DNA from: Macrostomum lignano
Lineage: Eukaryota
Reading direction: 5' to 3'
Assembly (NCBI GenBank): GCA_002269645.1
Contig: NIVC01000640.1
Span: 372,001 to 436,000, forward strand
Length of the DNA stretch: 64,000 bases
Below are positions 22,282 through 52,893 of the stretch, in pieces (the stretch's first letter is position 1; every line of letters starts with the position of its first letter). The translations under genes and the position numbers were made by a program. The notes beneath the pieces were generated by a model that had not been told where the DNA came from, did not search any database, and worked only from the letters and a program-made list of their open reading frames with translations.

Positions 22282-24317
22282 ATGGCCTGGATATCTTACG
22301 GTGGCCGCAGTGGCGCGACCATTCTCGATAAACGTCGCAGCCGCTACGCCGACAACGCTTCCAACAGCGACGACGGAGGCGCCGTTGGATCTGACGATCC
22401 GCCGCGTTACAAAGGCGTCCCATTGTGCGGCGCCGGCCTCTGCTCGGGCCCCGGCCTGCCGCCGAAGCGTCTGCCCCGGCCGGGCATCGACTGCGTCAAC
22501 GGTGACCGGCCCTGTCTGCCCTGCGACATCGTCAACGTGCGCCTACGTGTGGCCGTCGCCGGCTCCAAGGTGAAGCGGGCGGTGGCCGAGTGTCAAAGGC
22601 GCTACTTCTGCCGAGTGTGGAACCTGCTGTTCGCCTACCTGTTCCCTGGCGAGCACCGCGATGGCCCGTGCAATCCTCGAGTCGTGAGGCCCAACGATCC
22701 CATGCCTGTTTGCCGTGGCCAGCCGCAAAATAGTCAATGGCGGCAGAGACAAAAGTGAGCGTTTCTTACATTTCTGGGGCCGAAAAATCGCTGTTGGAAA
22801 GTTGATTTCCTGCCTTTCTACTGTCAAAGTTTCAATCTCGTTCGCTTCGACATCAAATCTTGGCAGTTCAGTTGCGAATGTTGATTATACTTGCTCGTCT
22901 AATACTCGTCAAAACTCGATTACAAACGAGCAACGAGCACTTGCTCAGCCCTGGTGCCCACTAGTAGCAGCTCGGCTCTGCTTTGAATTTTCCCGTATTG
23001 CACTAGGGAAATTCCTTAAACTTCTGGTTAGTAACAAAGTGGCAGTTTTCCCAGTTTCCAGGAATCAATAAATAGGGTGAGAGGGAAACTTGCATTCATA
23101 ATTGTCAGACAGGACGAGTTAAATGCTATTGAATAGCTTTGAATACCTGCCGGTGTTGTGAGAGGCTTCGCATGGCTTTTGTAGAAATATTTGCTAAATT
23201 GGACTTACATATTCTTGAATAAGTCTTAATGTCTCTATCGGAGATGAGATTAGTAAATTTATTTAACCCTTAAGGCACGGGTCGGAAAACTCAGCTCTCT
23301 TCTCTATTTTCTCTCCCCTCCCCTCTCATCTCATCTATCATCTCCTTGTTCCTCTTCTCTTTCCTCCTTTATCTGATCAAAAACAATTTGCAGACTTCTG
23401 GCTCGGGTTCTGTTCCCGAGGTTGCTTTAATGCGGCATGCACAAGCGGAATTCGATCGGGTTTCGGCTAAATTTAAAGGGTCGCCATCATAAACCCGAAA
23501 AATCACAACTCCGAAAGCACTTCCAATCATAAACCCAAAATATCATAACTCCGAAAACCTAAATAGTGTTGGACATTGCTAGAACTTTCGGAGTTATGAT
23601 ATTTCGGGTTTGTGATATTTCGGGTTTGTGATATTTCGGGTTTGTGATATTTCGGGCTTGTGATATTTCGGGTTTGTGATATTTTGGGTTTGTGATATTT
23701 CGGGTTTATGATATTTCGGGTTTAAGATGGAAAGCGCTTTTCGGAGTTGTAATTTTTCGGGTTTGTGATGCCCCCCATTGTTGGCCTAGCTGAAACTACA
23801 GCTGATTATCATTATCATCGGTCATCATATAAAAGTGTTTTACCTTTGGTCGATCGAAACTTCCGAAAGATACTAAATTAGGTCCATAGGCCACCCAACA
23901 GTCTCAACACTGTACAAGTGTATTCCAATCATTTCTCAGTGTCAAATTGAATCCCGCCTTGCTATGTTTATTTGCAGGCAGAGCCAGCCCAGGCCTGGCT
24001 GGGAGCGAGCGCTCAGCCCAGTTGAGGACATGAAGATGACGGACCATCGGGTGCGCAGACGCCTGCCAGACGAGCAGAAGCAACCGCCTGCCAGCACATC
24101 ACCGCCGCCGCCTCCGCCGCCGACAGCTAAGAAGCGACCAGCAGTTCAGACACGCCGACAGGCCGGCAACCTGCGGTATAACCTGGTTGACAGGCCCTAC
24201 CTGACTGGTGACAGCCTCAAGAGTCACCAGATTCGCGGCGCCACGCCAGCGCGGAATGGACAGTTGCGAGGCAATTTCTACGACCTGCCGGCAATGGATT
24301 CTGAGAAGAGAGCCTGA
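22282..24317 (+). CDS. Uncharacterised protein, unassigned 'CLPC-QRRYF-VW' family member X1 (~270 aa, 2 exons)
   Basis: Exon 1 22282-22754 (ATG start, donor AA/GTGAGC, phase 2). Exon 2 23978-24317 (acceptor TTTGCAG, phase 2, in frame). Conserved block shared with X2 and X3; exon 2 has a poly-Pro stretch and KKRP. Confidence 0.7.
23478..23776. mobile_element. MITE with subterminal 16-bp repeats, in the X1 intron
   Basis: Inverted ends (CATCA(T/C)AAACCCGAAAAAT(C/T)ACAACTCCGAAA) and tandem GATATTTCGGGTTTGT units. Confidence 0.7.
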
Positions 24318-25476
24318 TTTCTTGAGGAAACAGCGGCTCAACTGCATTTTTAAAATACGTGCAGGTTTAGACTGACTGCATATGCGCTCATCTGTATGAT
24401 AATGTAATTTCTCTAAAGCTTTATAACGCATATGATTTGTTTAGTACACAAGTGTTCAGTTTAGTGCTAACGCTTCTATATTTTGTTCCTATGTTAAAAA
24501 AGATGACTAGCTCTCTACTACTGCAGCTCATTAAGTAGTTGATACAACTTGCTTTTTATTTTATTGGGCAAATTTAATACACCTTTGTCACTTGTACATC
24601 ACTTTTTGTATTGTTTTAGTTGTGTCGGCAACTTCAAATTTCAAATTATACATAAACTGAGCTCTTAAAAATAGTTGCTATGCCCTCTCTGCATACTGCA
24701 TGTAAGAATCTTCGGGTTTAGCGCCTCGTATTGTCCACACTTTAGTCTGTGGCTAATTGTGTCTAGTTTCGTTTGGGCCACAAACGATTGCGTCGACGGA
24801 AATTGTGAACTAAGTAAATTTTTGCGCGCCTTTCAGGCATCGAAACAGGAATACAACAGATTGCTTATCTGCGAATAGTCTATGGTCAAGCCGCCCCCAT
24901 CTTTGGATATTCCCAACGGGTTATATTTGGATATACCCATTTGCAGATGAGCAATCTGTATATTCCTGTATCAATGCGTTTGCGAGGATATTTTTTATTC
25001 AATACAACAAAGCTGAATAAACAGATTGTATAAATGTACGAAAACGGCCGTAACGTGGGCATAATGAAACGTGGACCAATTGTTCCGCAATAATCGATGA
25101 GTAGAGCTAGAATCGAAAATAATTACACTCACATCGGCCGAATTGCATGGTTTGTTCCGCATGGGATCCTTGGGGCAAGCCTCTTCTTCGCTTGGCAGTG
25201 GTGGCAGAGCATCATCGTTACCGCATTCAATGAATCGGATGAACTCCATCAACTCTTCGTCATTCGCCTCGTCACGTCCACCCATACTCAAGTCGCTGAG
25301 AAAGTTGACCTCATTTCCATTCAAGCCGTCAATGCTTTCAATCGGCAAATTCGATCAATTTATCATTCGTATGAGTGGCATGAATAGAGGTTAGGGCAGA
25401 CAGAAGAAACAGGAACATGTATCCTCTGCTGCAGAGTTCCAGCTTATAAGACCACAACTTCATTTAACATGTTTCG

Positions 25477-27659
25477 CAGGGACAACTAAAACCCTCGGGA
25501 CGCGAAACGAGCCAATTCATGGCAAAAAATCTGAGGGGCTCGCTTAAAAGTATTGTTCTATGGCTTTTTCAAGTCTTCTCTGCTATCAGGCAAATTAAAA
25601 TTGCTTTAGCTGCGGCCAGCAGTGAAGCTAAGCTGAACTATATCAAGAGAAGCATTTTTTATTCACTTGATGAAATGCCAAGAAAGTGCAGCGTATTTCC
25701 GTGCTCGTCAAATTACAACTCTGAAGCCGTTCGAACACGGACATTTGCGTTTCCCAGAGATCCACAGGAGCGAGAGCGATGGAGAAAGGCGCTGCCAAAT
25801 ATTCTCCAGGTAAGAAACCAGATCATTTGCTGTCATTACTGCTGCATAATTCCGCTTCAATTCTGCATGCCAGTCTTGTCCAAACAACTTGAAACCCAAA
25901 ATTTATTATTTTAGAGAGTGACTGACAATATGGGCGTGTGCGTAAAGCATTGGCCAAGCGATGCTCCAATGGTCAAGAAAAACTATCGAAAGGCCAATTA
26001 ATCCTCCTGTTTTTAATGGAGTTCCTAGCTCGTGTTTTATTCAGAACCAAGGTACGTAACTTAAAGATTGCTCAACACTTAGCGTCTGTATCGATTTTGC
26101 CGCTCACAATTATCTTACTTTTATTTTTACTCTTATTTTAGACCAGGACCGACAGGCCGAAAAGCGCGGTGTTCTTTCTGACGCGAGGTGCGGCGACATC
26201 GATGAGATGGACGCTTTTCAGCTGCTTGATTTTTTGCCGGCATGGGAAAGTTTTCGAGCTGAGGTGAAAAATTCGGATGTCGTATCTCGACATGCACTGA
26301 ACACAGCTATTCTGAACGAAGACGTTTACTTGTTTACGTTAGATAAAGATGGAGACCTGTCTGTTCGAATTTTTGTCTCACCCAACTTTCTGATTCGTGC
26401 ATTCAAACTGCATACACCGATTTCGGTTCGAGACTTGTTGGGATTTCAACCGACACTCAAGCGCTGGTCGCAACTGGATGCTGTTGTCGTGCGGTGCAAA
26501 AATTCCGACGCCAATCCCCAACGTGAAGTCGAAGCGTTTGTTAGTAGAATCAGTGATGATATAGATTCTGACTCTGATTTGGATCCGTCGCTTCAGTTTT
26601 TGATTCGACAACTTAGCCTTACATTAGTAAATCGGAACAATCGCCGCTATGACATTTCACTAGTGCGATCCAGTCAGCATTGCTCTACTTGATCAGTAGT
26701 TCGGCTTACTCTTACCTACGGAAGCTATTGCCATTGCCTCATCCCCGAACGCTGCAGCTGCAACTAGCAGGTACAGGAGAAGTTAGCACAGAAACCGACG
26801 CAGCCGATGTGATCCAGTCAGTTTTTGCTAGTCTATCAGGAGCTCAGCGAAACTGCGTAATTATGTTTGACGAAATGTACATACAACCGTCCGTTCGATA
26901 TCGATGCCGTCACCTTCTGGGTCGAGCCGTCGACGATCCGGACCAGGTTGCTAGGACAATTTTGGCCATAATGGTAAAGCCATTACTTGGTGGAAAACCG
27001 TTTGTAGTCCGACTATTGCCGACATACATTTTGTCTGCGGAGTTTCTGCGAAAATGCGTCAGCCAATGTATTAAAGCAATTAACAACAACGGTGGCCGTG
27101 TCGTTGCTCTCGTCAGCGACAATCACCCTACCAACCGCAAGTGTTTTGCTTTATTTAGCGATGGAAGAGAGAAGCCATCGATTGGACTCCCACCAATACC
27201 GACGACATCCCATGATAGAAAGCTTCGGAAGTTAGATGTTCAGTAGGTGAAGTTCCAGCGTTTCCTTTATGTACGAGCTACTGACTGTTTGTGTCGTCTT
27301 GTCCTTGGAGTTCCGTATTTGCTTCTATCTTCTTGCCGTTGGAGTTTCATCTTCGCTTTCATCCTTTATCTTCTTGCCGTTGGAGTTCATCTTTGCTTTC
27401 ATCTTTTATCTTCTTGCCGTTGAAGTTTTTTGTTGATATGGCGATTACTTTATTGTAAATACATTGTAATTATATCACTGGTTCCTATTCTTTAAATTAA
27501 ATACTCGACATTGCCTCGCTTTACTATTTAATCTAACCGTTAATGCCTGATAGCAGAGAAGACTTGAAAAAGCCATAGAACAATACATTTAAGCGAGCCC
27601 CTCAGATTTTTTGCCATGAATTGGCTCGTTTCGCGTCCCGAGGGTTTTAGTTGTCCCTG
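25477..27659 (+). mobile_element. P-superfamily (THAP) DNA transposon, internally deleted, 2183 bp
   Basis: ~72-bp TIRs (CAGGGACAACTAAAACCCTCGGGACGCGAAACGAGCC...) and a perfect 8-bp TSD ATGTTTCG at 25469-25476 and 27660-27667. Confidence 0.92.
25675..27246 (+). pseudogene. Spliced THAP/P-element transposase, 3'-truncated, two frameshifts
   Basis: Exons 25675-25809, 25915-26051, 26142-~27180 with GT-AG introns. THAP C2CH (MPRKCSVFPC...FP...W...VCVKHW...P). Core YSYLRKLLPLPHPRTL, CVIMFDEMYI, VALVSDNHPTN. Frameshifts near 25985 and 26685. Confidence 0.85.
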
Positions 27660-28027
27660 ATGTTTCGTCTATGGTAATTTCAGACTGTTCCGCTTAACTT
27701 TTCGTTCCAGACGTTTAGTCTATGGCCATCATTTGGCTTGCGCCAAGTGGAAAATGCCTATGACACAAGTCCCTAGAATCACTCAGTGAACAATTCCCGT
27801 CTGGGAAGTTGTGTCCTAGCCGTTTTGAATTGGTTTTTGGACGAAACTAGACACAATTCCACTATCGAGAGTTCACGCCTCACACACAACTGCCATAGCG
27901 TCGAGGCCGGTTGTGACCTCTTGATAATCATACATTGTGTGCAGCAAACAATAACGAGTGCCCGCATGTTCCGCTCGCGCTATCTATCACACCAGACGCA
28001 GTGATTGACATTGACAGAGTTGACAAT

Positions 28028-28531
28028 ATGATGTCAAGGATTGATAGCGGAGGAATTTCAGTTGCGGCCGACCGTGGCTTCGAGCCATGTACATTACATT
28101 GCCTACTAGACATGCCACACAGTGGTTGCTTGGACGTTCAAAGGGTCTCCCTGTGGGATATCCCACTCTTCAAGATCTGCAGAGACTCAGTTAATCCTTG
28201 CCTACCGTGCGACATTGTCAAACTGCGGACGTGTGCCTCTGAAACTCAGCTAGATCGAAAAATGGCTGAGTACCAGAAGCGCTATTTCTACTGAGTCTGG
28301 GACCTGCTATTTGCCCACCTGTTCCCAGTTCAGTCTACAAGTCCAGCCGAGTCCCAGTCAGCCAAGCGCCAGAGAAAGTCTGACTGCGAAGCAAACAGCC
28401 AGCAGCAGAAACTGGAGCAGCAACCGCAACCGGTTGAGTCGACTGACACCCAGGAAAAAAGTGACGGTTTTCCCAGTTTAAATAGACGAGGCACGGGGGG
28501 AGCGAAGAGCAACAGACAAAAAGACTCATGA
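28028..28531 (+). pseudogene. Family member X2 with an internal TGA
   Basis: PCLPCDIVKLR...EYQKRYFY*VWDLLFAHLFP. The frame stays open for 78 codons after the TGA (28292-28294) and includes AKRQRK. The start codon is uncertain. Confidence 0.65.
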
Positions 28532-29580: not shown

Positions 29581-29928
29581 TCAGCAGTGCATGTACCTGC
29601 CGACAATCTGACCACATCCGGGACAGGTGTGCACCGCGTCTTTGGCTCGGTCGCAGCAGAATGGAAAGCAGCAGAAAAGAGGACACAGAAGCCACGGCAT
29701 GAGACCGTTGTACTTCTTCACTAAGGTAACGATATCCTTGTAGCAGTAAGGACAGGTCATAGGCAGCGGGTCAGGCCCGATCTGGGTGATCACAATGTCC
29801 GGCTGGTGCTGGCTCTGATGCCGGTGCTGCCGGCCCTCGTGTCCGGGCGGCCAGTCGTCCACTCCGCCGCGGTCGCGTATTCGGCCGCTGGAAATTGGCG
29901 GCGATCGAAGCCGCTCCGACCTGAGCAT
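29581..29928 (-). CDS. LITAF: LITAF-domain protein 1 (divergent; start uncertain)
   Basis: MTCPYC...hydrophobic/Cys segment...DAVHTCPGC zinc-ribbon halves. Confidence 0.8.
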   Translation of the reverse strand: MLRSERLRSPPISSGRIRDRGGVDDWPPGHEGRQHRHQSQHQPDIVITQIGPDPLPMTCPYCYKDIVTLVKKYNGLMPWLLCPLFCCFPFCCDRAKDAVHTCPGCGQIVGRYMHC

Positions 29929-31392
29929 GCCGAGCTGTGTGCGCGTAATTTTGGCTGGCGTTGACTGCCGTTGGCGGACCGTTCAATGCGGAGCTTCCAG
30001 GCCGGGCGCATCAAAGATTAACAATACGCGACTAGCGTTGATTCCGTGGCTAGATGCTACAGCATTTCGCAGCTAGTTTATGCTGCTTCTGTTGTTAATT
30101 ATTTTTTAAATAGATCTTTCCACCATAGAACCCTTATTTATTGCTGTTATTCCCACCCGATTTACGGGGCTCAAATGTCACGGAAATCTTCAATCCTCAT
30201 CACAGATACTAAAATAACTAGATGGGCCACTCAGGCATATATACTCGTACTTAGCAAAACAGCTTTCTACTTTCAGTTCAGTAGCAAAGAAGAATACATA
30301 AGCTATTTTTTTAAATAAAGGCTGCTGAAATGACTTTGACTCTGACTCTGAGTTTAGAAGCCCAAACTTGCAGGCGTAAACAACTTGCTAATTGGTTCAG
30401 CAATACTGTAATGCACATTAGCCAGTCCACTGAAATGTACATGGCAGCTTTAGGCTGGAAAAAAATTGGGGCGGGACGGTGGTAAAGTGGTAAGGCGCGG
30501 TTGGAGGGTTTAAGCTGAGGGTAAGAGCCAATAAATGAGCCTTGGCTTTAAAAATACATTAAAATGCTTCAGTTTAACTTACTACTAAACTGAAAGTAGC
30601 TTACACGCAAATGTGCTGAGTGGCCAATCTTAGTTATTTTAGTATCTGTGATCCTCATGATAGATTTGGGCTGGGTAAGGAGGGATTTGGAAGAGCGGAG
30701 GGCGAAGACTGGATGGATTGAAGCCACCACCTGGTTTCCGTTGTTTTTCCAGCATTTTTAAATATCAAAATGGTTGACCAGGTGATAGACGCTGGTCGAA
30801 AGACACTGATCACTTGGGGCAAAGGGTGGCGACTTTTCAATGTTGCTGAGTATAATTATTTTCCCATATTCTCTATCGGCAAAAGGAAGAATTCCTAATT
30901 CTATCTCCAATTGTGAAGTATTCGATAATTATGTACCTTTATGAAGCATTTCATGCCAAATGATCCTCACCGAGTCGTACTGCTCACAGCTGTGCAACAG
31001 GTGCAGCTGCTGACGCTATCGGCGCCCTACTGGTGAGGACAGGCGCGCACTCGGCAATTCGTCGGATGCCTGCTGACTGATGTCGGCGCCCTGGATTTGG
31101 TCGGCAGTGCAGCCTGCACTGCGACGCTGTTCTCATCTCGATATTAAGACTTACTGACAGGGAATTCTTTGCTGCTCCCAGGCTTAAAAGATACGAGTAC
31201 ATATGTTGCGATACAATGTCCCAGGGCCCTACAAAGAACGGAACAGTGATGAGCTGATTAAAATCGGGTAGCGAGGGCCCAAAGGCTTTTTTGCTGATTC
31301 TTTCAAAAAAAGTTTCGTAAAAAGATCCGAGCATATGAGTCCGGTAACAAGGAAACAGCACATCAGGAGTTTAGTAGCGAAAAAGCTAAAAT

Positions 31393-31470
31393 GTGACTGC
31401 ACTGGGAATCGAGCCTGGGCTGCTGGCACATCAGAGCACCGAGCTAGACCTCTGGGCTACGGCACCCCGG
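31393..31470 (-). mobile_element. Second copy of the tRNA-Glu-like short repeat
   Basis: The reverse complement closely matches 3815-3888. Confidence 0.6.
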
Positions 31471-31536
31471 AGACAAAGCTTTATTGAGAATAAAAGCTTT
31501 CCTTCGACAAAAATTTTCTGATTAAAAGTTGGCTTT

Positions 31537-31812
31537 GTGGATCCGATTAAGAGAAAGAAACTCCGCTTTTTCCGTCATGTTGTGAGAAGTGATGGAGTGC
31601 TGAAGGCTGTGGTAGAAGGTGGTGTTGAGGGACACAGGGGCAGAGGCAGGCCACAAGATGACTGGGCAGGCAACCTGAAGCTGCGGAGTGGAGAGAGTAT
31701 GATGCAGCTGAGCAGGATGGCCTTGAATCGTAGGAGGTGGAGAGTCGCTGTCGAGAATCGGGTGCACCAACGGCCATACTGGCTACGGACCTGATGATGA
31801 TGGCAATGATGA
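31537..31812 (+). mobile_element. 5'-truncated RTE-clade LINE 3' end with (TGA)n tail
   Basis: IKRKKLRFFRHVVRSDGVLKAVVEGGVEGHRGRGRP...W...R..W is a typical RTE ORF C-terminus, followed by TGATGATGATGGCAATGATGA. Confidence 0.8.
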
Positions 31813-31953
31813 AAAGTAGAAATAAAGTACATTTAGATAGTTTCTGTTCTATGATTTTTTTAGAATGATGCGGCTCCGTTTACACAGTGCCAATGCGATT
31901 AAGTTTGTTTGGTCAAATGTTGGCGTTTTCTTTTCAAACAGAAGCATCTGCAT

Positions 31954-32295
31954 CTAGTTGATCAGCCTGTGCCTTCCAACCACTTGCTGGCAGCTGGGGC
32001 AGCGGTGCTCCGCGTCCTTCAGTTTGTCAATGAAGAACGGGATGATGCAGCAGCCGAAAAAGCACCCAACCAACGCCAGACCGCCGCAGACAAGCCAAGG
32101 AGCCAAGCCATTGATTTGATTCACCGCTGTGGTGATGTTGACGCGGCAGTGCGGGCACATCATCGTCACCGGATGCTTATCGAATGACACAGACGGTTTG
32201 TCAACAACTTGCACTGCCGGCGGCTGCTGCTGCTGCTGGTAGCATCCCTGTGGAACATCGTATGCCGGTGGCGTAGCCTGCAGGCTCTTCTCCAT
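31954..32295 (-). CDS. LITAF: LITAF-domain protein 2 (113 aa)
   Basis: PPAY (PPxY) motif; CPHC...DAEHRCPSC. Confidence 0.9.
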   Translation of the reverse strand: MEKSLQATPPAYDVPQGCYQQQQQPPAVQVVDKPSVSFDKHPVTMMCPHCRVNITTAVNQINGLAPWLVCGGLALVGCFFGCCIIPFFIDKLKDAEHRCPSCQQVVGRHRLIN

Positions 32296-41452: not shown

Positions 41453-41863
41453 CTAGCTGATCAGCCTGTGCCTTCCAACCACCTGCTGGCAGTTGGGGCA
41501 GCGGTGCTCCGCGTCCTTCAGATCGTCAATACAGAACGGGATGAGGCAGCAGCCGAGCCAGCAGCCAATTAGAATGAGGCCGCCACTGACAAGCCACGGA
41601 GCCAAGCCATTAACGTAGCTCACCGCCGTGGTGATGTGGGCGCGGCAGTGCGGGCACGTCGTCGTCACCGGTTCCTTATTGAATGACACCGCGGCCGCAG
41701 GCTGTTGGACGACAACTTGCACTGATGACTGCTGCGGCTGCTGCTGCATTGGGTAATGCTGCTGCGGAGGAGGATACGGCGCTCCAGTTTGAGGATAGTG
41801 CTGCGGCTGGTAGCCTCCCTGCGAAGCATCGTATGCCGGTGGCGGAGCCTGGCCCTTCTCCAT
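41453..41863 (-). CDS. LITAF: LITAF-domain protein 5 (136 aa)
   Basis: Differs from copy 4 by one residue (YN to YD). Confidence 0.92.
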   Translation of the reverse strand: MEKGQAPPPAYDASQGGYQPQHYPQTGAPYPPPQQHYPMQQQPQQSSVQVVVQQPAAAVSFNKEPVTTTCPHCRAHITTAVSYVNGLAPWLVSGGLILIGCWLGCCLIPFCIDDLKDAEHRCPNCQQVVGRHRLIS

Positions 41864-42809
41864 GGCTGGCTCTCAACTTGTTTTTCCTGTCTGTGTTATG
41901 TGGAATCTAATTTTTGCTCAGACTGCGAGCGGTAAATAAGTTCGCTGCCGAATTCAGAGCCCACTTATATTTTGTGTCCGAATGCTGCCTGCCTGTCGCT
42001 AGACAGCAGCAGCCCAAAGATTGGACAGCGTGCTACTCAAAATTTTCTTGAAAATGCGCACAGCATTTCATCTCTCGTCCATTTTGCAACGACTGCATAT
42101 TATTGAGCGAGAATCGTGAGCATCTTGTTGGCAAGAACTTTCCGAGTGTAGCTGCTTTAATTGCTTCACATCAATCCTTAAGTTTACTTTACTCGAGTCT
42201 GCTAACTTTACCAATTAAATGTGCGCATGTCTGTGAGAAGGCGTGCGAAAGGCTTTCCTGGCTCGGTTGTATGATCAGACCAGGGACTTCTTAAGTCCCT
42301 GGCCTGAGTTAAGAAGTCCCTGGCCTGAGCATACAACCGGGGCCAGCTTAAGAAGTCCCATGGCTCAGGCACGTTGTTCGAAGAGTTTTTCATTTCCACG
42401 TACTGTGAGCACAATGCTGGCGGACCGCTTTTCTTTATACTAAATCTTGAGCCGTAGTTAGGTAGAATTTCGGCTTTCTATTTTAGGGCGTTGTTTTTGC
42501 GATGCGATGAGTCAGTAAATACGTGGCTGTTTATTGTACAGCGCTAACTAATAGGTGCGAACAGCTGAAAAAACTCGATGGAAAAAGCTCAATTTTCTTG
42601 CGATTGATGTCAACTACATACTAATGCAGCAATAGCACTGCTCAGATATCAAATCGCAACAATAGCTAGTATGCCTGATGCGCTACAGCCTGCGGCTCTG
42701 CTACACTGCTTTGATTTGGAAATCCATACACATTGGTAGGTAGCATCTTTATACTAACGCAGATCACAGAGCAGGGTGAACCAGTTAGTTTGCTACTAAC
42801 TCACTTTGA

Positions 42810-44580
42810 ATGAATGGCCGATGAATTGAATGAGTCAATGAGCAGCCTTATTTACGCTGGTAGGGCGCCTGCATCTTCCTTACACGACTGTGGGCAGTGC
42901 GACTCAGCGCGGATGATGTGGTCTGCCTACTGGAGTTGCCGACAGCGCAACAGGTCGCTTGGACGGTCCAGACTGTGCACCGTTGGATACTCGCTCGTCG
43001 CCGGTCTTGATTGCGGCGTGCAGCAGGCCAGCGTGCGCCGCGTCAACGTCAACTCGCTGTTCGAGCGATTCAGTCAACGTCCAGGTCTCGGCAGTGTAAA
43101 GCAGGACGGTCTCGACCACAGTCTGGAACAACACCGTCCTCTGGCGGTCACGTAGGACCTCGGACTGCAAGACTGTTCTCACAGAACTAAAGGCAGGCGG
43201 ACGTCGGGAGCCAGACCGTCAAGTTAGACGATATACTGGCATCCGTATGTTCCGTCGTCTGTCCATATACGCCTCGTCAAGAAATCGCAACCTCGATGTT
43301 GTGCTCGATGTGGTGGGGCACGCAGAGCACGACGGGCTTCTACGTGTTGACCACCAGGCCCACACTCGCCGCAACCGCAACCACCCCGTCCAGCTCTCGC
43401 TGGATGCTTTCGACGGTTAAGGACTCTAGGTCGAGATCGTCGGAGTAGCCAAGCACGCTGAGCCGTCTGTCTGGTTGGCGTCAACCCATGCTTCGCCGCA
43501 GCAGAATGCCATCGTAGTAGAAAAAGCATCCCGCAGCACCCAGTTAAGCTCCAAAAAACAGGAACGTCAATAGGATATTGCCCTCGAGCACCCTGAGTAT
43601 ATCTCAAAGAAGTCCGATAGGCCGTCAGGTGTTAACACAGCAGCTTTACTGTTAGCACACCAGTTAACACACCAGCCTGCTGAACAAGCACTGCAACCTT
43701 GGGAGGCAACGAGGCTGCCTCAGCTCCTCAGTAATGGCGCACCTCCAAGATTGTCTCCATCCCGAAGAAAGGCGCCTCCACTAGCTGGACAACCAGCGGG
43801 GCATCGCGCTAGAAGGCACAACACCGAAGCTGCTGAACGCAATTCTGTGCAACCACCTCCTGCCCGGCCTCAAGTCGCTGCTGCTGAGCCTCCAAAGCGG
43901 CTTCCGCCCGGGCAGGTCCACTACCGACCAGGTTGCCACCATCCGCTCTGTCATCGAGGCCTGCAAGACCCGCCAGCGCTCCGCGTCAATCATCTTCGTC
44001 GACTTTTGCAAGGCGTTTGACTCGGTGTCCAGGCCTGCGATCGCGTGGCTTCTATCTCATATGGCGTACCTGCTGCGCTAGTGAGCGCGGTGATGGATCT
44101 CTAACGCGACTACCGGGGTTTTGTCATGTCAAACAACGGCCCCACAAAAGATTTCGGCACCAGCTCAGACGGTTGTGGACTACGTGCTTCGTCGGTCCCA
44201 CCGCGAGGATGACAGCTACTTGCTGGTCTCGCGCCGAAGCTCCACACACCGTGCTGTTTCGCTTCCCGCTCTCGCGGGTTAAGGGAAAGGGTTAGATTCG
44301 GTATGGAGTCGCACTCCATCCTGAGGGCCTATGAGTTTCACAACAGCTGATCGATGCCAAAACGTCGTTCTACCAACGACACGAGAGCTGCTGTTGTGTC
44401 AGCGGAAGCCTGTCTGACCTCTTCGACACCTCGTCTGGTGTTTGCAACACGCTGACTTTGTTTGTGCTGCTCAGTGTCAGTGTGCTGACCCTGAGAGTGC
44501 ACTCCATCCCCAAGCAGTCATCCAGACATCCCACGTACTGTCGCTGTCTGTCTGGCGTTACCCGTCTCTCTTCGTGGGCA
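42810..44580. mobile_element. LINE fragments, repeat unit 3
   Basis: Near-identical to units 1 and 2. Confidence 0.8.
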
Positions 44581-45057
44581 AGCCTCCATTGGCTGACTTA
44601 CCCGCGGTAGGGTCTGTGTGTCGGGGGCAAGGGGTGAGACTTACGAGCTACATCGCTCTGGCCTAGTATAAGGCTCTTTGTGTCTCCTTTCCCTGCGAAA
44701 TACGCTCGCTCCGCTTTTCATATATGCGTAGCAAGCTTTGTTAGTCGCTACAGATCCTTGTAAAATAAGACATCAGCAAGTCATAATAATGCTTCATTTT
44801 CACTTGTCATGAATGGCTAAAGAGGTTGTTATAAAGCAATAGATAAAAAGCCATGTTTTATATTTAAAAGAAGTTTCTGATTTAACTTTTATTGTAGGTA
44901 AAAGTACAAAAAAGTACATTGGGTAGTTAGTTTAGTGTATCTCTGAATATGATTTTTAGAATGATGGGGCTCTGTGAACATTGTGCCGATGCGATAAAGT
45001 TTGCTTGGTCAGGTCTAATCGTTCTTTTCGTTTCTTTTTGAGCAGCAAAATCTGTGC

Positions 45058-45468
45058 CTAGCTGATCAGCCTGTGCCTTCCAACCACCTGCTGGCAGTTG
45101 GGGCAGCGGTGCTCCGCGTCCTTCAGATCGTCAATACAGAACGGGATGAGGCAGCAGCCGAGCCAGCAGCCAATTAGAATGAGGCCGCCACTGATAAGCC
45201 ACGGAGCCAAGCCATTAACGTAGCTCACCGCCGTGGTGATGTGGGCGCGGCAGTGCGGGCACGTCGTCGTCACCGGTTCCTTATTGAATGACACCGCGGC
45301 CGCAGGCTGTTGGACGACAACTTGCACTGATGACTGCTGCGGCTGCTGCTGCATTGGGTAATGCTGCTGCGGAGGAGGATACGGCGCTCCAGTTTGAGGA
45401 TAGTGCTGCGGCTGGTAGCCTCCCTGCGAAGCATTGTATGGCGGTGGCGGAGCCTGGCCCTGCTGCAT
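45058..45468 (-). CDS. LITAF: LITAF-domain protein 6 (136 aa from the ATG at 45468)
   Basis: MQQGQAPPPPY...CPHC...HRCPNC. Confidence 0.92.
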   Translation of the reverse strand: MQQGQAPPPPYNASQGGYQPQHYPQTGAPYPPPQQHYPMQQQPQQSSVQVVVQQPAAAVSFNKEPVTTTCPHCRAHITTAVSYVNGLAPWLISGGLILIGCWLGCCLIPFCIDDLKDAEHRCPNCQQVVGRHRLIS

Positions 45469-46423
45469 GGCTAAAGCTTTCAAGTTATTTGTCCTGTCTG
45501 TGTTATGTAGAATCTAATGTTTGCCCAGACTGCGAGCGGTAACTAAGTTCGCTGCCGATTTCAGAGCTCACTTATATTTTGTGTCAGAATGCTGCCGGCC
45601 TGTTGCTAGACACAATTTTTTTTTCAAAAATGCGCACAGCATTTCATCTCTCTCCTCCATTGTGCGACGGCTGCATAATATTGAGCGAGAATCGTGAGCA
45701 TCTTGTTGGCCAGAGCTTTCCGAGTGTAGCTGCTTTAATTGCTTCACATCAATCCTTAAGTTTACTTTACTCGAGTCTGCTAACAGTACCAATTAAATGT
45801 GCGCTGGGCTGTGAGAATAGTCGTGCGAGACGAGCAGGCTTTCCTGGCTCGGTTGGATGCTCAGGCACATTGCTTGAAGATTTTTTCATTTCTACGCACT
45901 GAGCTCAAAAATGAGGGTAGGGCGGGCAGATCTCGAGCTGTGGAACTTTGGCTTGTTGCCTTGTTGCCTGTTTATTGTACAGCGCCAACTAATAGGTGCG
46001 GACACAGATGCTAGAATAGCAGATACTAGTTATTCTAGTATCTGTGTGTGCGAACAGCTGAAGAAACTCAATGGAAAATGCTCAACTTTTCTGCGATTGA
46101 TGTAATCTACATGTACTAGTAATGTAGAAATATCACTGTTCATTTTGCATATCACAGAAATATGTCTGATGCTCTACAATATAGCCAGGTGTACAACCTG
46201 CTGCTCAAGCTGCCTACAGCTTGTAATATCCAGACACATTGTAAGTAGCATCCGGATACTAAACGCAGATCACAGGGCAGGGTTGAACTGAATAGAGATT
46301 CGACAAGTTAGAAATTTGCTTGTATCTGTGTTAGTTATCGACAATGGAATTCAGTATTTTTAACAGAATATGTAATTTAGCGCCAAATACATGTATAATA
46401 TTAATCATTAACAAATAGTTTAC

Positions 46424-46459
46424 CAAGGACTTCTAGACTAGTTAGTCTAGAAGTCCTTG
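46424..46459. repeat. Near-perfect palindrome (17-bp arms, 2-nt loop)
   Basis: CAAGGACTTCTAGACTA-GT-TAGTCTAGAAGTCCTTG. Confidence 0.85.
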
Positions 46460-47137
46460 TAGTTTACTTTGAGTGGAGCCAGCCAGAGTCTAGCTTTGGG
46501 TGTGATTGTTTAGTTCAAATCGCTGGAGATTCTGCTCGTATGGCAACAAGAAACTTTCGACATTCTTTCGTCTTACGATACCCCACAGCCCAATTAATTA
46601 CTTGCGTCAAATGGAGAATGGTAAGAACGGAAACAGACGAGCAAACTGCAAAAATCTTAATCGTAGCTTACTAGAGCCATTTTAACAAATTGTAAGAGCC
46701 GAGAATTTAGAGTAAGTTTACGAAGTATATTTTGATGCACAATAATTTACGAGCGATTAAATAGTCAGCGATGATAGATCGATTAAAGTGACTCACCCAA
46801 CTGGGGTGGTGGGCATGTACAGAGAAGAAAGCGAGATGCAAGTACATATACTAATAGAGCAGCCCCCACCCCGACGGCCCAAACCAAACGCAACCCTACA
46901 AAATTTTCCATTTAGGGTATCGTATAACGAAAGTGAATATAAGGATCGTGCTCTAGCTAGTAAGCTAGTTAGCTAGTAAGCTAGTAAGCGCGATTTGAAA
47001 CTGGAAAGAGCTTTGGGTTGTATTGGAATACCCGGTACATGTACGCAGTTATGTACAAGCGCGCGAAATTCAACTGTACTCGTACTTTAATCGTACTTTA
47101 AAAATTCCGACGAAGTTACTCACAGCAAAATCTGGAA

Positions 47138-47488
47138 CTAGCAGATCACCTTGTGCCTGCCAATCACCTGCTGGCAGCTGGGGCAGCAGTGCTCCGTGTC
47201 CTTCAGAGTGTTGATGCAGAGCGGGATGAGGCAGCAGCCGAGCATACAGCCAATCAACGCCATACCGCCGCAGACAATCCAAGGAGCGAAGCCATTGATC
47301 TGATTTACCGTCGTGGTGATGTTGGAGCCGCAGTGGGGACACGTGGTCGTCACCGGTTCCTTGTCGAATGATATTGGCTGCATGACCATATTGTACGGTA
47401 CTGGCGGCTGCTGCTGTTGCAGCACTTGTTGGTATTGCTGCTGCTGTATGCATTCCTGCTCGCATTCATTCCTTCCCGCCACTTTAGT
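47138..47488 (-). CDS. LITAF: LITAF-domain protein 7; the exon begins at a splice acceptor and has no upstream in-frame ATG
   Basis: TTGCCACAG/ACT AAA GTG acceptor in phase 0; CPHC...DTEHCCPSC. Confidence 0.88.
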   Translation of the reverse strand, partial: TKVAGRNECEQECIQQQQYQQVLQQQQPPVPYNMVMQPISFDKEPVTTTCPHCGSNITTTVNQINGFAPWIVCGGMALIGCMLGCCLIPLCINTLKDTEHCCPSCQQVIGRHKVIC

Positions 47489-48849
47489 CTGTGGCAATAT
47501 CAAAACGGGACTTCTTGAATTCTTTTTTATATATTTAGTTATATAGATTCAATAAATTAGTTATTGGTTATTTCGATAGGATAATAATTTCATCACTAAG
47601 GGGGCTTTTGACGGTGCTGATTTCGATTTTTTCAGCTTTGTTTTTGGTAGCTTCAACCCAACTATATGTAGCTTAAAGCCAACCACTGGGGTACGGGGAT
47701 GGGGGGTTCTAGGATAGGGAGATTCTTCATGGGGATTGATTTTTTATATACCGAAAATTCAATAGAGACATTGGGGGTCTATTGAAGATTAAGCATATAA
47801 ACTTTTAGACCTTTGAGGGAGGTAGCTAGCTCACCAAAGAACCATGGCCAAGAACTGGGACATGAGGAATGGGGGGTTAGGGTTTCAATTACCATGTTAG
47901 CATTCAGAAACATTTGGCATCATTACTAGCTTCCTAATTTCATATCTTGAAAACACTTTTTCTTAATCTTTTTGTTTCTAAAAAATGTTTATTTAAATGC
48001 ATTATTTTTACAAACTGTATCCAATTCTCATTGACAGCATTTGGGGATTAACAAATTGACCACGAGGCATGATCAATTTGCACAGAATCGCCACTGGAGA
48101 GATTAGTGCCCATCCTGGACCTCAACGACATGGACATTTTTGACGGAAGTGAGGAATCTGGGTGATTCCGTATCGCGACTGAGATGTACAAGAAACGGCT
48201 TGAACAGTCGTTAAAGAGGGCATCAATGCCTTCATTGTGCAGTGGTGAACCTGCGCGTGTCAAAGCGACGTTCTTCTAATTAAAATGTCCATGGACTTCT
48301 AACCCTCTGCTATCACAACGACTATATCAATGATATATTTTCTAGTGGCATATTTTCTGATTGTTCTTGTCCCCAAATTTGTCTACGGTGCAACATATTT
48401 GATGCAATGCATTCTGCAAAATGTCGGTTGTGAAGTTGCTTGTCGAGTGCAATCAAGAAAAAATAAAGGCTACCGTCACAACTAAATGATTTGGATCAAC
48501 CAGAAAATCTGCTTTTTTAGGAATTCAATAAGGAGAACTTTAAGTAAAAATTGTGAGTATATTTGCGGACTCAAAAAATAATACAATTCGGGTTTCATAA
48601 AACTTTTTCAAACTTTTTGTTTAAACACTATATTATAAGTTAAAGTCGTGTCTTGTAAAAGATTGATAAAAAACGTAATGGTTGAGCCTCCGATGTTCTT
48701 TGCGAACAATTTAAAATACTCGATGCTCTTCCAAACTTAATTAAATGTGTACCAGTAAAACACTGTTTGAACGGGTACAGTTACAGCTCCTCCAATCGAC
48801 CACTGTTTCAGAAGCCAGGCTCTGAAAGAATAGAATTCAGAAGGGCAGA

Positions 48850-49495
48850 GCAATGCGGATGGTTGTGTGAAATGTACATACGGGGAAGGGGTTAGAGCAA
48901 TGGGCGTTGGTTGTGTGAAATGTACATACGGTAAGGGGTAGAGCAATGCGGGGTTGGTTTTAAGAAATGTACATACGGGGAAGAGGTAGAGCAATGCGGG
49001 GTTGGTTTTAAGAAATGTACATACGGGGAAGAGGTAGAGCAATGCGGGGTTGGTTTTAAGAAATTTACATACGGGGAAGGGGTAGAGCAATGCGGGGTTG
49101 GTTTTAAGAAATGTACATACGGGGAAGAGGTAGAGCAATGCGGGGTTGGTTTTAAGAAATGTACATACGGGGAAGAGGTAGAGCAATGCGGGGTTGGTTT
49201 TAAGAAATTTACATACGGGGAAGGGGTAGAGCAATGCGGGGTTGGTTTTAAGAAATTTACATACGGGGAAGGGGTAGAGCAATGCGGGGTTGGTTTTAAG
49301 AAATTTACATACGGGGAAGGGGTAGAGCAATGCGGGGTTGGTTTTAAGAAATGTACATACGGGGAAGGGGTAGAGCAATGCGGGGTTGGTTTTAAGAAAT
49401 TTACATACGGGGAAGAGGTAGAGCAATGCGGGGTTGGTTTTAAGAAATTTACATACGGGGAAGGGGTAGAGCAATGGGGGTTGGTTGTGTGAAAT
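48850..49495. repeat. 48-bp minisatellite (~13 copies)
   Basis: GTAGAGCAATGCGGGGTTGGTTTTAAGAAAT(G/T)TACATACGGGGAAG(A/G)G units. Confidence 0.95.
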
Positions 49496-49593
49496 TTGCG
49501 AGTAATACGCTCGTAATAGCAACAATAGCTCGTCAGTATGGTCATAAAAATCAAACTTACACTATGCATCGATGTTGAAAAAGCAATCCAGCT

Positions 49594-51434
49594 CTACATG
49601 CCAATAAAGGAAGCTTTTCGCGGCGGCGCCACGGCAATTTGATCGGTAAGCGAAATCCGACGACTGTCGCTGGTATCCAGCCGCGGCGGGGGGTCGAAAC
49701 TTTGAATCGACGGCTTTCCTGGCCGGTTGCTCACCTGATATTCGAAAATGAGTTGTCTTATAACAATTGACTGATTGTTTTTCTTAATGGCATTAACAGG
49801 GACGTCGCCAGGAGGGACAGGGGGCAGGGGCATAGGAGGGACAGGGGAAGACAGTGGGGACAGGTGGGATAGGGGGGGGACAATGGGGAAAGGAGGGACT
49901 AAAATGAGTGCCCGAGGCGCCAAAATGAGTGCCTGAGGCGCCACAATGAGTGCCTGATTTGGCGCTAAAATGAGTGCCTGAGGCGCCACAATGAGTGCCT
50001 GATTTGGCGCTAAAATGAGTGCCTGAGGCGCCAAAATGAGTGCCTGATTGGAGCGCCAAAATGAGTGCCTGATTGGAGCGCTAAAATGAGTGCCTGATTG
50101 GAGCGCTAAAATGAGTGCCTGAGGCGCCACAATGAGTGCCTGATTGGAGCGCTAAAATGAGTGCCTGAGGCGCCACAATGAGTGCCTAATTGGGGCGCTA
50201 AAATGAGTGCCTGCGGTGCCAAAGTGAGTACTAACAACAGCAATTCCTTTGCTATAATATTAATAACAGAATGCTTTGCTCTGGAGTTTAGGTTTTGTCC
50301 CTCTCACCATAAAAGCCATGGCAACGCCCATTTGAATCATACTCTTTATAAGAAAAAATTCTTGACGTAAACGATAGATCCTACTTATACGAGTATAAAG
50401 TAGAAAACGGCTGCAATAGTGTCAGTGCGCCTATTAAAGATAAGTTTTTTATGTACATAATTATACTTTAGGACATTAAGTGGAGGACACTTTACTACTT
50501 TATTTTAAATAAGTTTAAGTAGTAATTTCAATTTTAGGAAGTCCTTGGAGAGACGGCATTTTGTCCTTCAGCTGGAAGGTGATTAACCTCCAGGACTAAC
50601 TCAATTAGTAGGACGGAAAACAACGTTTCTTGGAAAATTCCAGGCGCGCAGGTTTCACCGAAAATGTATTCTGTTGCACATTTTGTCATATCAAAAAGGG
50701 CTATAAGAATGGCATATCATATCAAAAGATAAACATTGGGTCTGCCTCCTATCAGAAGCAACAACAATTGTTGTGCTGAAAAACCAGACACGTCCTGTAT
50801 CTTTGTAATGCATTTTTGGTAAAAAACTTGCCTCCTACCTTCTACTTGCACAGTCCTTGTCATAAACTATTCCCGAAAATGTTATTTTGAGCTTTGCTAT
50901 CACCTGGTTTAGGCTGACTTTTGACAGTGCTCATAGGTCATGACATTTTTAACAACTGGGAGAATCATGGGCCTTCTCCTAAGGAATGATAAACTGCTCA
51001 GGCAGTCTCAGTGCCTTGGAATCTAAGCGAGAATTCTCCACCCCTACCTTGAAGAATTTCTTCTTTTTCGCAGCAGCCGGCTGTGCATCACTGGTTTCGC
51101 CTTCAGCGTCAGCGTCCTCGTCAGCACCAGCATCTTGCTCTGGCTCGACGTCCGCGTCAGCGTCCGCCTGTCCGAACAGCTGGCCGAACACGAGGTGCCA
51201 GACGTCGCGAAAGTAGCGCCGCTGGCAGTCGAGGGCGCGCATCGCCAGCCGTTTGGCGTTGTCGGGATCGGTGAAGCGCAACTCGGCGTAGCAGCAGGGC
51301 AGGCAGCAGCCAGGAGCGCTGCAGCGCGTGTACACCGGCATGCAGGTGGACTCCAGGGAGAAGTCCCTGCTGATCGGAAATTGCCTGTCGGCGGCATGGC
51401 TGCGGCAGCATTGGGTAGTGCAGTGGCGTTGCAT
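49594..51434 (-). CDS. Family member X3 (~175 aa, 2 exons)
   Basis: Exon 1 51048-51434 (ATG; CCLPCCYAELR...DCQRRYFRDVWHLVFGQLF; acidic tract; AAKKKKFFK; donor AAG/GTAGGG, phase 0). Exon 2 49594-49734 (acceptor TATCAG; VSNRPGKP...ASFIGM*). Confidence 0.65.
49900..50225. repeat. 21-25-bp minisatellite in the X3 intron
   Basis: AAAATGAGTGCCTGA(GGCGCC/TTGGAGCGCT) units. Confidence 0.9.

Positions 51435-51601: not shown

Positions 51602-52244
<643 letters not shown>

Positions 52245-52843: not shown

Positions 52844-52893
<50 letters not shown>
52844..52893. repeat. (TAGA)n, ~12 units
   Basis: Direct inspection; left flank of the Tc1 insertion. Confidence 0.95.

What the first reader, a model, noticed from the sequence alone, without database searches (positions are those of the whole stretch)
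22282..51434. Unassigned three-member gene family (X1, X2, X3) with a new Cys-plus-aromatic-helix motif
Seen: three otherwise dissimilar ORFs share one block. X1: DCVNGDRPCLPCDIVNVRLR...AECQRRYFCRVWNLLFAYLFP. X2: ICRDSVNPCLPCDIVKLR...AEYQKRYFY*VWDLLFAHLFP. X3: RCSAPGCCLPCCYAELR...LDCQRRYFRDVWHLVFGQLFG. X2 and X3 also share AADR(G/Q)F upstream. All have a low-complexity tail with a basic cluster (AKKRP, AKRQRK, AAKKKK). X1 and X3 have phase-compatible second exons with canonical splice sites, which argues for real genes. Protein-level conservation despite strong DNA divergence suggests purifying selection. I recognise no known domain. Inference: a lineage-specific small nuclear protein family, possibly Zn-binding via C..CLPC, with an amphipathic interaction helix.
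Basis: partly seen in the sequence, partly recalled or inferred. Interest (0 to 1): 0.75.

Follow-up and report, generated by a model that had tools for sequence, protein, structure and literature searches.

The report
Flatworm-only small cysteine-helix protein family
Two working genes and one decaying copy in the flatworm Macrostomum lignano share a 55-residue block (four fixed cysteines plus an aromatic helix) that matches no known protein family; it is a real but fairly ordinary lineage-restricted gene family of unknown function.

Summary
The window is Macrostomum lignano contig NIVC01000640.1. Three ORFs share one ~55-aa block, C-x5/6-C-L-P-C ... C-Q-[RK]-R-Y-F-x-x-V-W-x-L-[LV]-F-x-x-L-F, and there is no fourth copy.

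- **X1 (270 aa) and X3 (175 aa):** both are two-exon genes with GT-AG introns. GenBank already lists them as RNA-seq-derived "hypothetical proteins".
- **Three homeologous loci:** the whole locus occurs three times in the assembly. Between copies X1 and X3 show pN/pS of 0.11-0.44. Their GC3 (0.72-0.73) matches neighbouring genes.
- **X2 is a pseudogene:** two copies carry an in-frame CGA>TGA and a Cys>Tyr change. The third copy keeps both residues but has a 7-bp frameshift. pN/pS is 0.6-1.1.
- **No relatives found:** Pfam, PDB sequences, a profile search of 1.84 billion representative proteins and Foldseek found no credible relative outside M. lignano.
- **Tested links:** F-box and LITAF were tested and rejected. 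An 18-column resemblance to the phospholipid-scramblase palmitoylation motif is suggestive only.
- **Structure:** AlphaFold2 gives a mostly disordered protein with one long amphipathic helix.

Function is inferred, not shown. I favour a Zn-stabilised knuckle-plus-helix interaction module. A palmitoylated membrane anchor is the main rival. Interest is modest.

The parts
22282..22754 (+). X1 exon 1 (codons 1-158, the last split after its 2nd base); holds the conserved block at 22465-22665
   Evidence: ORF and motifs. tblastn to annotated P0003 at 98.7%. GT donor at 22755 read directly. Window copy = PAA79337.1 / BOX15_Mlig017691g2.
23978..24317 (+). X1 exon 2 (Pro-rich, basic tail with AKKRP; the stop codon ends at 24317)
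   Evidence: tblastn to P0003 residues 158-271. AG acceptor at 23976-23977. The spliced CDS of 813 nt translates to 270 aa.
28028..28531 (+). X2, single-ORF pseudogene; premature TGA at 28292-28294 inside the block (28145-28345); TAC (Tyr) at 28271-28273 where the other copies have Cys
   Evidence: The TGA is shared by homeolog L002. Homeolog L003 keeps CGA and TGC but has a 7-bp deletion frameshift. pN/pS is 0.6-1.1. GC3 is 0.55. No protein is annotated at any of the three loci.
51048..51434 (-). X3 exon 1 (codons 1-129); conserved block at 51153-51356; acidic tail and KKKK cluster
   Evidence: Annotated as BOX15_Mlig007488g1 (P0001). The complete 175-aa form P0013 sits at the homeologous locus.
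49594..49734 (-). X3 exon 2 (46 codons plus stop)
   Evidence: tblastn to P0001 residues 155-202. GT-AG phase-0 junction read from the sequence.

Best explanation
What it is (shown): a Macrostomum-restricted family of small protein-coding genes lying beside a tandem array of LITAF-like genes. X1 (270 aa) and X3 (175 aa) are intact, spliced and under purifying selection. X2 is a decaying copy. The proteins are mostly disordered. They share one ~55-aa module: a cysteine knuckle C-x5/6-C-L-P-C, a short hydrophobic-alternating stretch, then a ~27-residue amphipathic helix that starts at a fourth invariant Cys and carries the aromatic face Y-F..V-W.L[LV]F..L-F. How it most likely works (inferred): the four invariant cysteines bind one Zn ion, which pins the knuckle to the N-terminus of the helix. 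This would give a mini-domain in the manner of a zinc finger or treble clef. The exposed aromatic face would dock onto a partner protein or onto another copy of itself. The variable tails (acidic in X3, Pro-rich and basic in X1) and the short basic clusters would give each paralog its own output and possibly nuclear import. My probabilities: about 0.9 that this is a genuine protein-coding orphan family with X2 a pseudogene; about 0.3-0.35 for the Zn-knuckle/interaction-helix mechanism specifically. The single confidence figure given (0.5) is a compromise between the two.
For: Organism and annotation. The GenBank gene models come only from RNA-seq transcript assemblies, and transcripts overlapping repeats were removed (PMC5730564). 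Exon structure. Three syntenic homeologous loci with the order Rpb1 - NDUFS8-like - X1 - X2 - LITAF array - X3. Purifying selection between homeologs: X1 pN/pS 0.11-0.17 and X3 0.16-0.44. About 4 of 13 substitutions in X1 and 7 of 16 in X3 are nonsynonymous, against ~75% expected; one-sided binomial p = 0.001 and 0.004. These totals are my rough tree counts from the pairwise tables. None of the X3 replacements hits an invariant block position. GC3 is 0.72-0.73, like neighbouring genes, against introns at 0.41-0.43. Four Cys are invariant in all X1 and X3 copies and in the ancestral-like X2 copy; the fourth is lost only in the X2 copies that also carry the nonsense codon. A helix is predicted at X1 residues 94-120 (pLDDT 50-65; about 75 when the module is folded alone), and the rest is below 50. 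Hydrophobic moment is 0.33-0.46. There is no N-terminal hydrophobic stretch like a signal peptide and no stretch long enough for a transmembrane helix (read from the sequences).
Against: No experiment or homolog bears on function. AlphaFold2 confidence is low: 3-4 sequences in the alignment, pLDDT 41 for the whole protein and 60 for the module. It does not show a compact knuckle-helix domain. The Cys spacing is not that of any catalogued zinc finger. X3 has extra Cys pairs (CCLPCC, and QCC at the N-terminus), which look more like acylation clusters. Substitution counts behind pN/pS are small. I found no expression level or tissue data. Orthologs in other Macrostomum species could not be searched.
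Confidence: 0.5

Rival explanations
1. S-acylated membrane-associated proteins. The cysteine cluster (CLPC, CCLPCC) is palmitoylated. Together with the aromatic amphipathic helix and the nearby basic residues it anchors the protein in the plane of a membrane. Loss of acylation could release it to the nucleus through the basic cluster, as described for phospholipid scramblase 1 (my own knowledge, not looked up here).
For: hhalign aligns the block's Cys motif plus the following strand with the CCCPCC-LQEIEI segment of human PLSCR1 over 18 columns: probability 17.5%, pairwise E = 0.0014. Only 1 of 200 composition-preserving shuffles reached that score. UniProt's automatic name for one X3 copy is 'Phospholipid scramblase'. 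X3 has Cys doublets. The helix has a broad aromatic face flanked by Arg/Lys. KKKKFFK in X3 resembles polybasic-hydrophobic membrane-binding stretches.
Against: Pfam's Scramblase model does not hit any copy. UniProt gives three different names to near-identical copies, so those names are unreliable. Acylation clusters rarely keep exact spacing and an invariant L-P, nor a conserved distant fourth Cys.
Confidence: 0.2
2. A very divergent fragment of a known family (LITAF/SIMPLE-like from the adjacent array, F-box, or scramblase) rather than a new family.
For: X genes flank seven LITAF-like genes, whose domain contains GCCLIPFC, similar to X3's GCCLPCC. LPxDIV...FCRVWNLL looks superficially like the F-box LPxEIL...VCKRWxxL. 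The scramblase motif evidence is given above.
Against: LITAF: hhalign probability 0.6% over 8 columns, and 72 of 200 shuffles do as well. The order of elements also differs, because the hydrophobic segment precedes the Cys motif in LITAF. F-box: hhalign probability 0.2%. Pfam gives no hit at E <= 10. A profile search of 1.84e9 proteins returned no member of any of these families.
Confidence: 0.07
3. Transcribed but functionless ORFs (young or de novo genes, or all three decaying), with the block similarity left over from recent duplication.
For: No homolog outside the species. The proteins are mostly disordered. One copy is demonstrably dying. X1-X3 block dN/dS is ~0.9 by Nei-Gojobori.
Against: The paralogs are old: synonymous sites are at or near saturation for X1-X2 and X2-X3, and there is no DNA similarity outside the block. 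Even so, 16 block positions stay invariant. Homeolog pN/pS is well below 1 for X1 and X3 but not for X2. GC3 matches real genes, while X2 has drifted to 0.55. All six X1 and X3 reading frames are intact.
Confidence: 0.07
4. A transposable-element or virus-derived protein domain.
For: The M. lignano genome is repeat-rich. A P-element-like transposase fragment lies between X1 and X2 (26680-27246).
Against: The copies occur only at syntenic positions in the three homeologous loci, and the flanks are not repeated. The GenBank annotation excluded transcripts overlapping repeat annotation. There are no Pfam TE domains in X1-X3. The transposase fragment sits in a 2.2-kb insertion that is absent from homeolog L002, so it is unrelated to X2.
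Confidence: 0.03

Closest known systems
Phospholipid scramblase (PLSCR1) palmitoylation motif CCCPCC and the strand that follows it
   Same: A Cys cluster with an embedded Pro is followed by an alternating hydrophobic stretch. A basic NLS-like cluster lies elsewhere in the protein. The 18-column hhalign match has probability 17.5% and was reached by 1 of 200 shuffles.
   Different: There is no scramblase beta-barrel and no Pfam PF03803 hit. The X proteins are 175-270 aa and mostly disordered. The aromatic helix follows the Cys motif after ~20 residues, not ~100.
LITAF / SIMPLE-like domain proteins (PF10601), the immediate genomic neighbours
   Same: They are small proteins with CxxC knuckles, a CCL(I)P(F)C motif and a hydrophobic membrane-dipping segment. 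They sit in the same gene cluster.
   Different: The order of elements is reversed. There is no second HxCxxC knuckle. Profile-profile similarity is at chance level.
Small zinc-knuckle-plus-helix modules (classical C2H2 and treble-clef fingers)
   Same: Two ligands come from a CxxC knuckle and a further ligand sits at the N-terminus of a helix. The size is ~30-55 aa and a short beta-like stretch lies between knuckle and helix. This is inference from the sequence pattern.
   Different: The ligand spacing C-x5/6-C-x2-C-x20-22-C matches no catalogued finger. There are no His ligands. No sequence or structural hit was found.
F-x-x-x-W-x-x-L amphipathic helices of acidic activation domains (e.g. 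the MDM2-binding helix of p53)
   Same: The invariant F-x-x-V-W-x-L-[LV] reproduces the F/W/L spacing. In X3 it is followed by a strongly acidic tail (direct reading of the sequence; the motif itself is from my own knowledge).
   Different: It is a short linear motif that could arise by chance. X1 has no acidic tail. No partner is known in flatworms, and none of this was tested.

Membership tests
F-box (PF00646) | ~45-aa three-helix motif LPxE(I/L)L..I...L ... VCK.W..L recognisable by profile | tested here: not met
   No Pfam hit at E <= 10. The LP-to-W distance is 7 residues longer than in F-boxes.
LITAF / SIMPLE-like (PF10601) | N-terminal CxxC knuckle, ~20-residue hydrophobic segment, then CC.IPFC and a C-terminal HxCxxC knuckle | tested here: not met
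   No Pfam hit. hhalign against the window's own six LITAF-like proteins gave probability 0.6% over 8 columns. 72 of 200 shuffles reached the same score. There is no second knuckle, and the hydrophobic element lies after the Cys motif, not before it.
Phospholipid scramblase (PF03803) | ~220-aa Tubby-like beta-barrel with a C-terminal hydrophobic helix | tested here: not met
   No Pfam hit for X1, X2, X3 or for P0015, the copy UniProt names 'scramblase'. AlphaFold2 predicts no beta structure.
Phospholipid scramblase (PF03803) | Cys-rich palmitoylation motif (CCCPCC) followed by a beta strand | tested here: inconclusive
   18 aligned columns, probability 17.5%, E = 0.0014. 1 of 200 shuffles reached the score.
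Transposable-element protein | Dispersed multi-copy DNA with repeated flanks and TE-type domains | tested here: not met
   The only copies are the three paralogs and their syntenic homeologs. DNA similarity is limited to the block. There are no TE domains.
Pseudogene (applies to X2 only) | Disabled reading frame plus relaxed constraint relative to intact paralogs | tested here: met
   TGA at codon 89 in two homeologs. A 7-bp frameshift in the third, and a 4-bp deletion in L002. pN/pS 0.6-1.1 against 0.11-0.44 for X1 and X3. GC3 0.55 against 0.72. Not annotated as coding.
Taxonomically restricted (orphan) protein family | No detectable homolog outside the lineage at profile sensitivity | tested here: met
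   The profile hmmsearch of 1.84e9 representatives returned only the two M. lignano clusters plus four repeat-protein artefacts. Word-indexed searches found only M. lignano proteins. No PDB sequence hit and no Foldseek hit. Caveat: genomes and transcriptomes of other Macrostomum species were not searchable.
Structural zinc-binding module | Four conserved Cys/His ligands that bind Zn stoichiometrically | not testable with these tools
   Four Cys are invariant in all intact copies. Metal binding itself needs biochemistry.

The most novel reading that the evidence does not exclude
The ~55-aa block is a previously undescribed autonomous domain: a C-x5/6-C-L-P-C...C zinc knuckle clamped to an aromatic F..VW.L.F..LF helix. 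It would be confined to macrostomid flatworms and serve as a docking module. The paralogs would have diverged into an acidic (activator-like) form and a Pro-rich/basic form, possibly switching between membrane and nucleus through Cys acylation.
Probability: 0.2. Interest if true: 0.45.

Novelty: new variant of a known kind. Interest (0 to 1): 0.3.

Why it matters
If confirmed, this would add one new small domain family (a DUF-level entry) to the large uncharacterised fraction of flatworm genes. M. lignano can be studied by transgenesis and RNAi, so function could be tested directly. The locus also gives a clean small-scale picture of gene fate after the recent whole-genome duplication in this species. 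Two paralogs are kept under constraint in all three homeologous copies. The third paralog has been disabled by different lesions in different copies. Beyond that, lineage-restricted families of small disordered proteins are common, and nothing here points to an unusual mechanism.

Tried and rejected
- **F-box idea** (LPxDIV...FCRVWNLL): rejected by hhalign and Pfam.
- **Origin from the neighbouring LITAF genes:** rejected.
- **UniProt names:** X3 copies are called 'Phospholipid scramblase', 'DUF4708 domain-containing' and 'Ubiquitin-like domain-containing'. Pfam supports none of them. P0002 is a frameshifted model and P0014 a 1031-aa fused model from an older assembly.
- **Extra hits of the profile search (P0004-P0007):** these are long internal-repeat proteins. 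P0004 looks like a plakin-repeat protein with a recurring VSVWDLLFSKY. Their scores sum over 7-11 repeats, so they are artefacts.
- **Foldseek on the module model:** best E = 7.5, so no match. Searching with the full-length model would be meaningless at pLDDT 41.
- **Word-indexed search with X1 exon 2 alone:** it returned nothing, not even P0003, which contains the sequence. Negatives from that tool are therefore weak.
- **Gene IDs in the literature:** Mlig017691, Mlig007488 and Mlig015263 appear in no paper text. Of six M. lignano papers, four had supplement text to search, with no occurrence; two had none held. No expression or tissue data were obtained.
- **Paralog-level dN/dS over 44 codons:** uninformative. 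Synonymous sites are at or near saturation or convergent through codon bias.
- **Selenocysteine or readthrough of the X2 TGA:** set aside, given the relaxed constraint, the accompanying loss of the fourth Cys, and the independent frameshift in the third copy.


Full report
**Where the window comes from.** A protein search with the X3 ORF returned a 99%-identical GenBank protein, 'hypothetical protein BOX15_Mlig007488g1, partial [Macrostomum lignano]'. Its contig, NIVC01000640.1 of assembly GCA_002269645.1, is 100% identical to window 39594-61515. The window is therefore nuclear DNA of the free-living flatworm M. lignano, so the standard genetic code and spliceosomal introns apply.

**Check of the observation.**
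- X1 is an ATG-initiated ORF at 22282-22755 (+).
- X2 spans 28028-28531 (+) and has an in-frame TGA at 28292-28294, in the middle of the conserved block (FY*VW).
- X3 starts at 51434 on the - strand.

Aligned, the three share 16 invariant positions in 69 columns: P, C, C-L-P-C, Q-x-R-Y-F, V-W, L, F, L-F. Within-window tblastn E-values are 2e-12 (X1-X2), 1.5e-5 (X1-X3) and 1.5e-4 (X2-X3). An HMM of the block run with all filters off over six-frame translations finds exactly these three sites, and the next best site scores 6.8 bits. At the DNA level the paralogs are alike only inside the block: 64 bp at 80% and 58 bp at 72%. The AADR(G/Q)F motif near the N-terminus of X2 and X3 is real, and X1 has a weaker counterpart (RSRYADN).

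**Gene structures.** Two annotated proteins fix the exons.
- X1: exon 1 at 22282-22754, GT...AG intron, exon 2 at 23978-24317. The product is 270 aa, equal to PAA79337.1 (BOX15_Mlig017691g2), which lies on the window's contig.
- X3: exon 1 at 51434-51048, GT...AG intron in phase 0, exon 2 at 49734-49594. The product is 175 aa, as in the complete homeologous model PAA75180.1.

The two introns differ in phase, so they need not be homologous. The GenBank annotation of this assembly was built only from RNA-seq transcript assemblies (StringTie/TACO, TBONE, TransDecoder). [quoted passage not shown] The two-exon models therefore stand for spliced transcripts, although I could not inspect reads myself.

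**Three homeologous loci.** The 90%-identity clusters hold three GenBank copies of X1 and three of X3, on contigs NIVC01000640.1 (the window), NIVC01000897.1 and NIVC01001827.1. I fetched both other loci. They are 92-99% identical to the window over the X genes and about 97% in the X1 intron. All share the order RNA polymerase II Rpb1 (-), NDUFS8-like 2xFer4 gene (+), X1 (+), X2 (+), LITAF-like genes (-), X3 (-). This fits the recent whole-genome duplication reported for the species (abstracts of PMC10468722 and PMC10733133).

**Selection.** All three X1 copies and all three X3 copies have open reading frames.
- Nei-Gojobori pN/pS is 0.11-0.17 for X1 and 0.16-0.44 for X3.
- Rough tree totals taken from those pairwise tables are about 4 nonsynonymous of 13 changes for X1 and 7 of 16 for X3, where about 75% would be expected under neutrality. 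One-sided binomial p is 0.001 and 0.004.
- None of the X3 replacements touches an invariant block residue.
- GC3 is 0.72 (X1) and 0.73 (X3), the same as the neighbouring LITAF-like genes (0.72-0.74). The X1 and X3 introns are at 0.41-0.43.
- Paralog-level dN/dS over the block is about 0.2 for X1-X2 but about 0.9 for X1-X3. Synonymous sites are at or near saturation or biased, so that test is uninformative.

**X2 is a pseudogene.**
- The window and L002 copies share the CGA>TGA nonsense codon. They also share TGC>TAC, which removes the fourth conserved Cys.
- L002 additionally has a 4-bp deletion in the tail.
- The third copy (L003) keeps CGA (Arg) and TGC (Cys), so its block reads AECEKRYFYRVWDLLFAHLFP. 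It has a 7-bp deletion and a scrambled stretch after codon 19. This separates the ATG from the block, and the block-frame ORF contains no Met.
- pN/pS between X2 copies is 0.6-1.1 and GC3 has fallen to 0.55.
- No protein is annotated there at any locus.

The ancestor at the time of duplication probably had an intact X2, and different lesions have since disabled it. The family is therefore two genes plus one pseudogene per locus, not three genes.

**Search for relatives.**
- Pfam gives nothing for X1, X2, X3 or the older gene models.
- A profile of the block finds nothing meaningful among PDB sequences; the best E is 0.12, to a conotoxin-like peptide.
- hmmsearch of the profile against 1.84 billion representative proteins returns the two M. 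lignano clusters at E ~1e-31. The four further hits (E 4e-7 to 6e-4) are all long internal-repeat proteins whose scores add up over 7-11 repeats, so I treat them as artefacts.
- Word-indexed searches find only M. lignano proteins.
- The search with X1 exon 2 alone returned nothing at all, not even P0003 itself, so negatives from that tool carry little weight.
- Genomes and transcriptomes of other Macrostomum species could not be searched with the tools available.

**Leads that were tested.**
- F-box: the pattern LPxDIV...FCRVWNLL recalls LPxEIL...VCKRWxxL. hhalign against an F-box alignment gives probability 0.2%. Rejected.
- LITAF: seven single-exon LITAF-like genes lie between X2 and X3, and their domain contains GCCLIPFC, like X3's GCCLPCC. 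hhalign gives 0.6% over 8 columns, and 72 of 200 shuffles score as well. Rejected.
- Scramblase: UniProt's automatic name for one X3 copy is 'Phospholipid scramblase'. The block's Cys motif and the following strand align with the CCCPCC-LQEIEI segment of human PLSCR1 over 18 columns, at probability 17.5%. Only 1 of 200 shuffles does as well. Pfam's scramblase model does not hit. It is a functional analogy worth testing, not evidence of membership.
- Transposable element: rejected, because the copies are only syntenic, their flanks are unique, and they contain no TE domains.

**Structure.**
- AlphaFold2 on full-length X1 with a 4-sequence alignment gives mean pLDDT 41. The single secondary-structure element is a helix at residues 94-120 (GSKVKRAVAECQRRYFCRVWNLLFAYL).
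- The isolated 68-aa module gives pLDDT 60 and pTM 0.43. It shows a short helix over IVNVRLR and the long helix at pLDDT ~75.
- Foldseek against the PDB finds nothing (best E 7.5).
- The helix is amphipathic, with hydrophobic moment 0.33-0.46. Hydrophobic residues sit at i, i+1, i+4, i+5, i+7/8/9, i+12 and i+13.
- No copy has an N-terminal hydrophobic stretch like a signal peptide or a hydrophobic stretch long enough to span a membrane (direct reading).

**Mechanism (inference).** The most telling feature is that four cysteines, C-x5/6-C-x2-C-x20-22-C, are invariant in every intact or ancestral-like copy. The fourth is lost only in the X2 lineage that also acquired the stop codon. A CxxC knuckle plus a ligand at the N-terminus of a helix is how small zinc modules are built. 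I therefore favour a Zn-stabilised knuckle-helix mini-domain whose aromatic face (Y-F..V-W.L.F..L-F) binds a partner or itself. The tails differ: acidic in X3, and Pro-rich and basic with AKKRP in X1. They would confer paralog-specific output and perhaps nuclear import. I give this about 0.3-0.35.

The main rival (about 0.2) is that the Cys cluster is S-acylated and, together with the amphipathic helix and the basic residues, holds the protein on a membrane, as in scramblase. Minor rivals are a very diverged known family (0.07), functionless transcribed ORFs (0.07) and TE origin (0.03).

**Comparison with what is known, and verdict.** The family belongs to no catalogued family that I could test. 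In kind it is a taxonomically restricted family of small, largely disordered proteins with a short Cys-plus-helix module. Such families are common in flatworm genomes, and these genes are already deposited as hypothetical proteins. The main correction is that X2 is a pseudogene. Interest is modest (0.3). The family could become more interesting if the module proves to be a new Zn-binding fold or an acylation-controlled switch. Both can be tested directly in this transgenesis-capable animal.

Noticed in passing
window 29581-47503 (- strand): Seven single-exon LITAF-like (PF10601) genes lie between X2 and X3. Four of them sit in a 3605-bp tandem array (33962-45864, copies 96-98% identical). Copy number differs between the three homeologous loci, so the array is expanding or contracting.
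   Followed up: partly
window 1-7209 (- strand): Exons of RNA polymerase II largest subunit (Rpb1 domains 1-7). A 1.4-kb segment (1-1419) is repeated at 1800-3221 with 98% identity. This is either a tandem duplication inside the gene or an assembly artefact.
   Followed up: no
window 25476-27660: A 2.2-kb insertion is absent from the homeolog on NIVC01000897.1. It carries a P-element/THAP9-like transposase fragment (ORF 26680-27246; Pfam TNP-like_RNaseH_N and Tnp_P_element), just upstream of the X2 pseudogene.
   Followed up: partly
window 18568-19213 and 52889-53718: A ~645-bp insertion is missing from homeolog L002. Its ends are 99% identical, in inverted orientation, to sequence near 52.9-53.7 kb. 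It is probably a recently active non-autonomous transposable element.
   Followed up: no
window 21109-21370 / 21772-22032: A 262-bp inverted repeat pair (95% identity) ends about 250 bp upstream of the X1 start codon. It could be a MITE-like element or a hairpin in the X1 promoter region.
   Followed up: no
window 48843-49486; 51774-52146; 53717-54017; 61448-62290; 17505-18003; 23586-23723: Several satellites are present: a 48-bp unit x13.5 just 3' of X3; (GA)n of ~370 bp just 5' of X3; a perfect (TAGA)75; an 18-bp unit x45; a 31-bp unit x16; and a 16-bp unit x8.6 inside the X1 intron.
   Followed up: no
L003 15577-16073 (X2 copy on NIVC01001827.1): This X2 copy keeps the Arg and Cys codons that are mutated in the window copy, but a 7-bp deletion cuts it off from its ATG. 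M. lignano mRNAs are often trans-spliced, so whether a spliced leader could supply a start codon and rescue this copy was not examined.
   Followed up: partly
protein clusters of X3: UniProt gives three different automatic names (Phospholipid scramblase, DUF4708 domain-containing, Ubiquitin-like domain-containing) to near-identical or frameshifted copies of the same small protein from the older ML2 assembly. Pfam supports none of them.
   Followed up: yes
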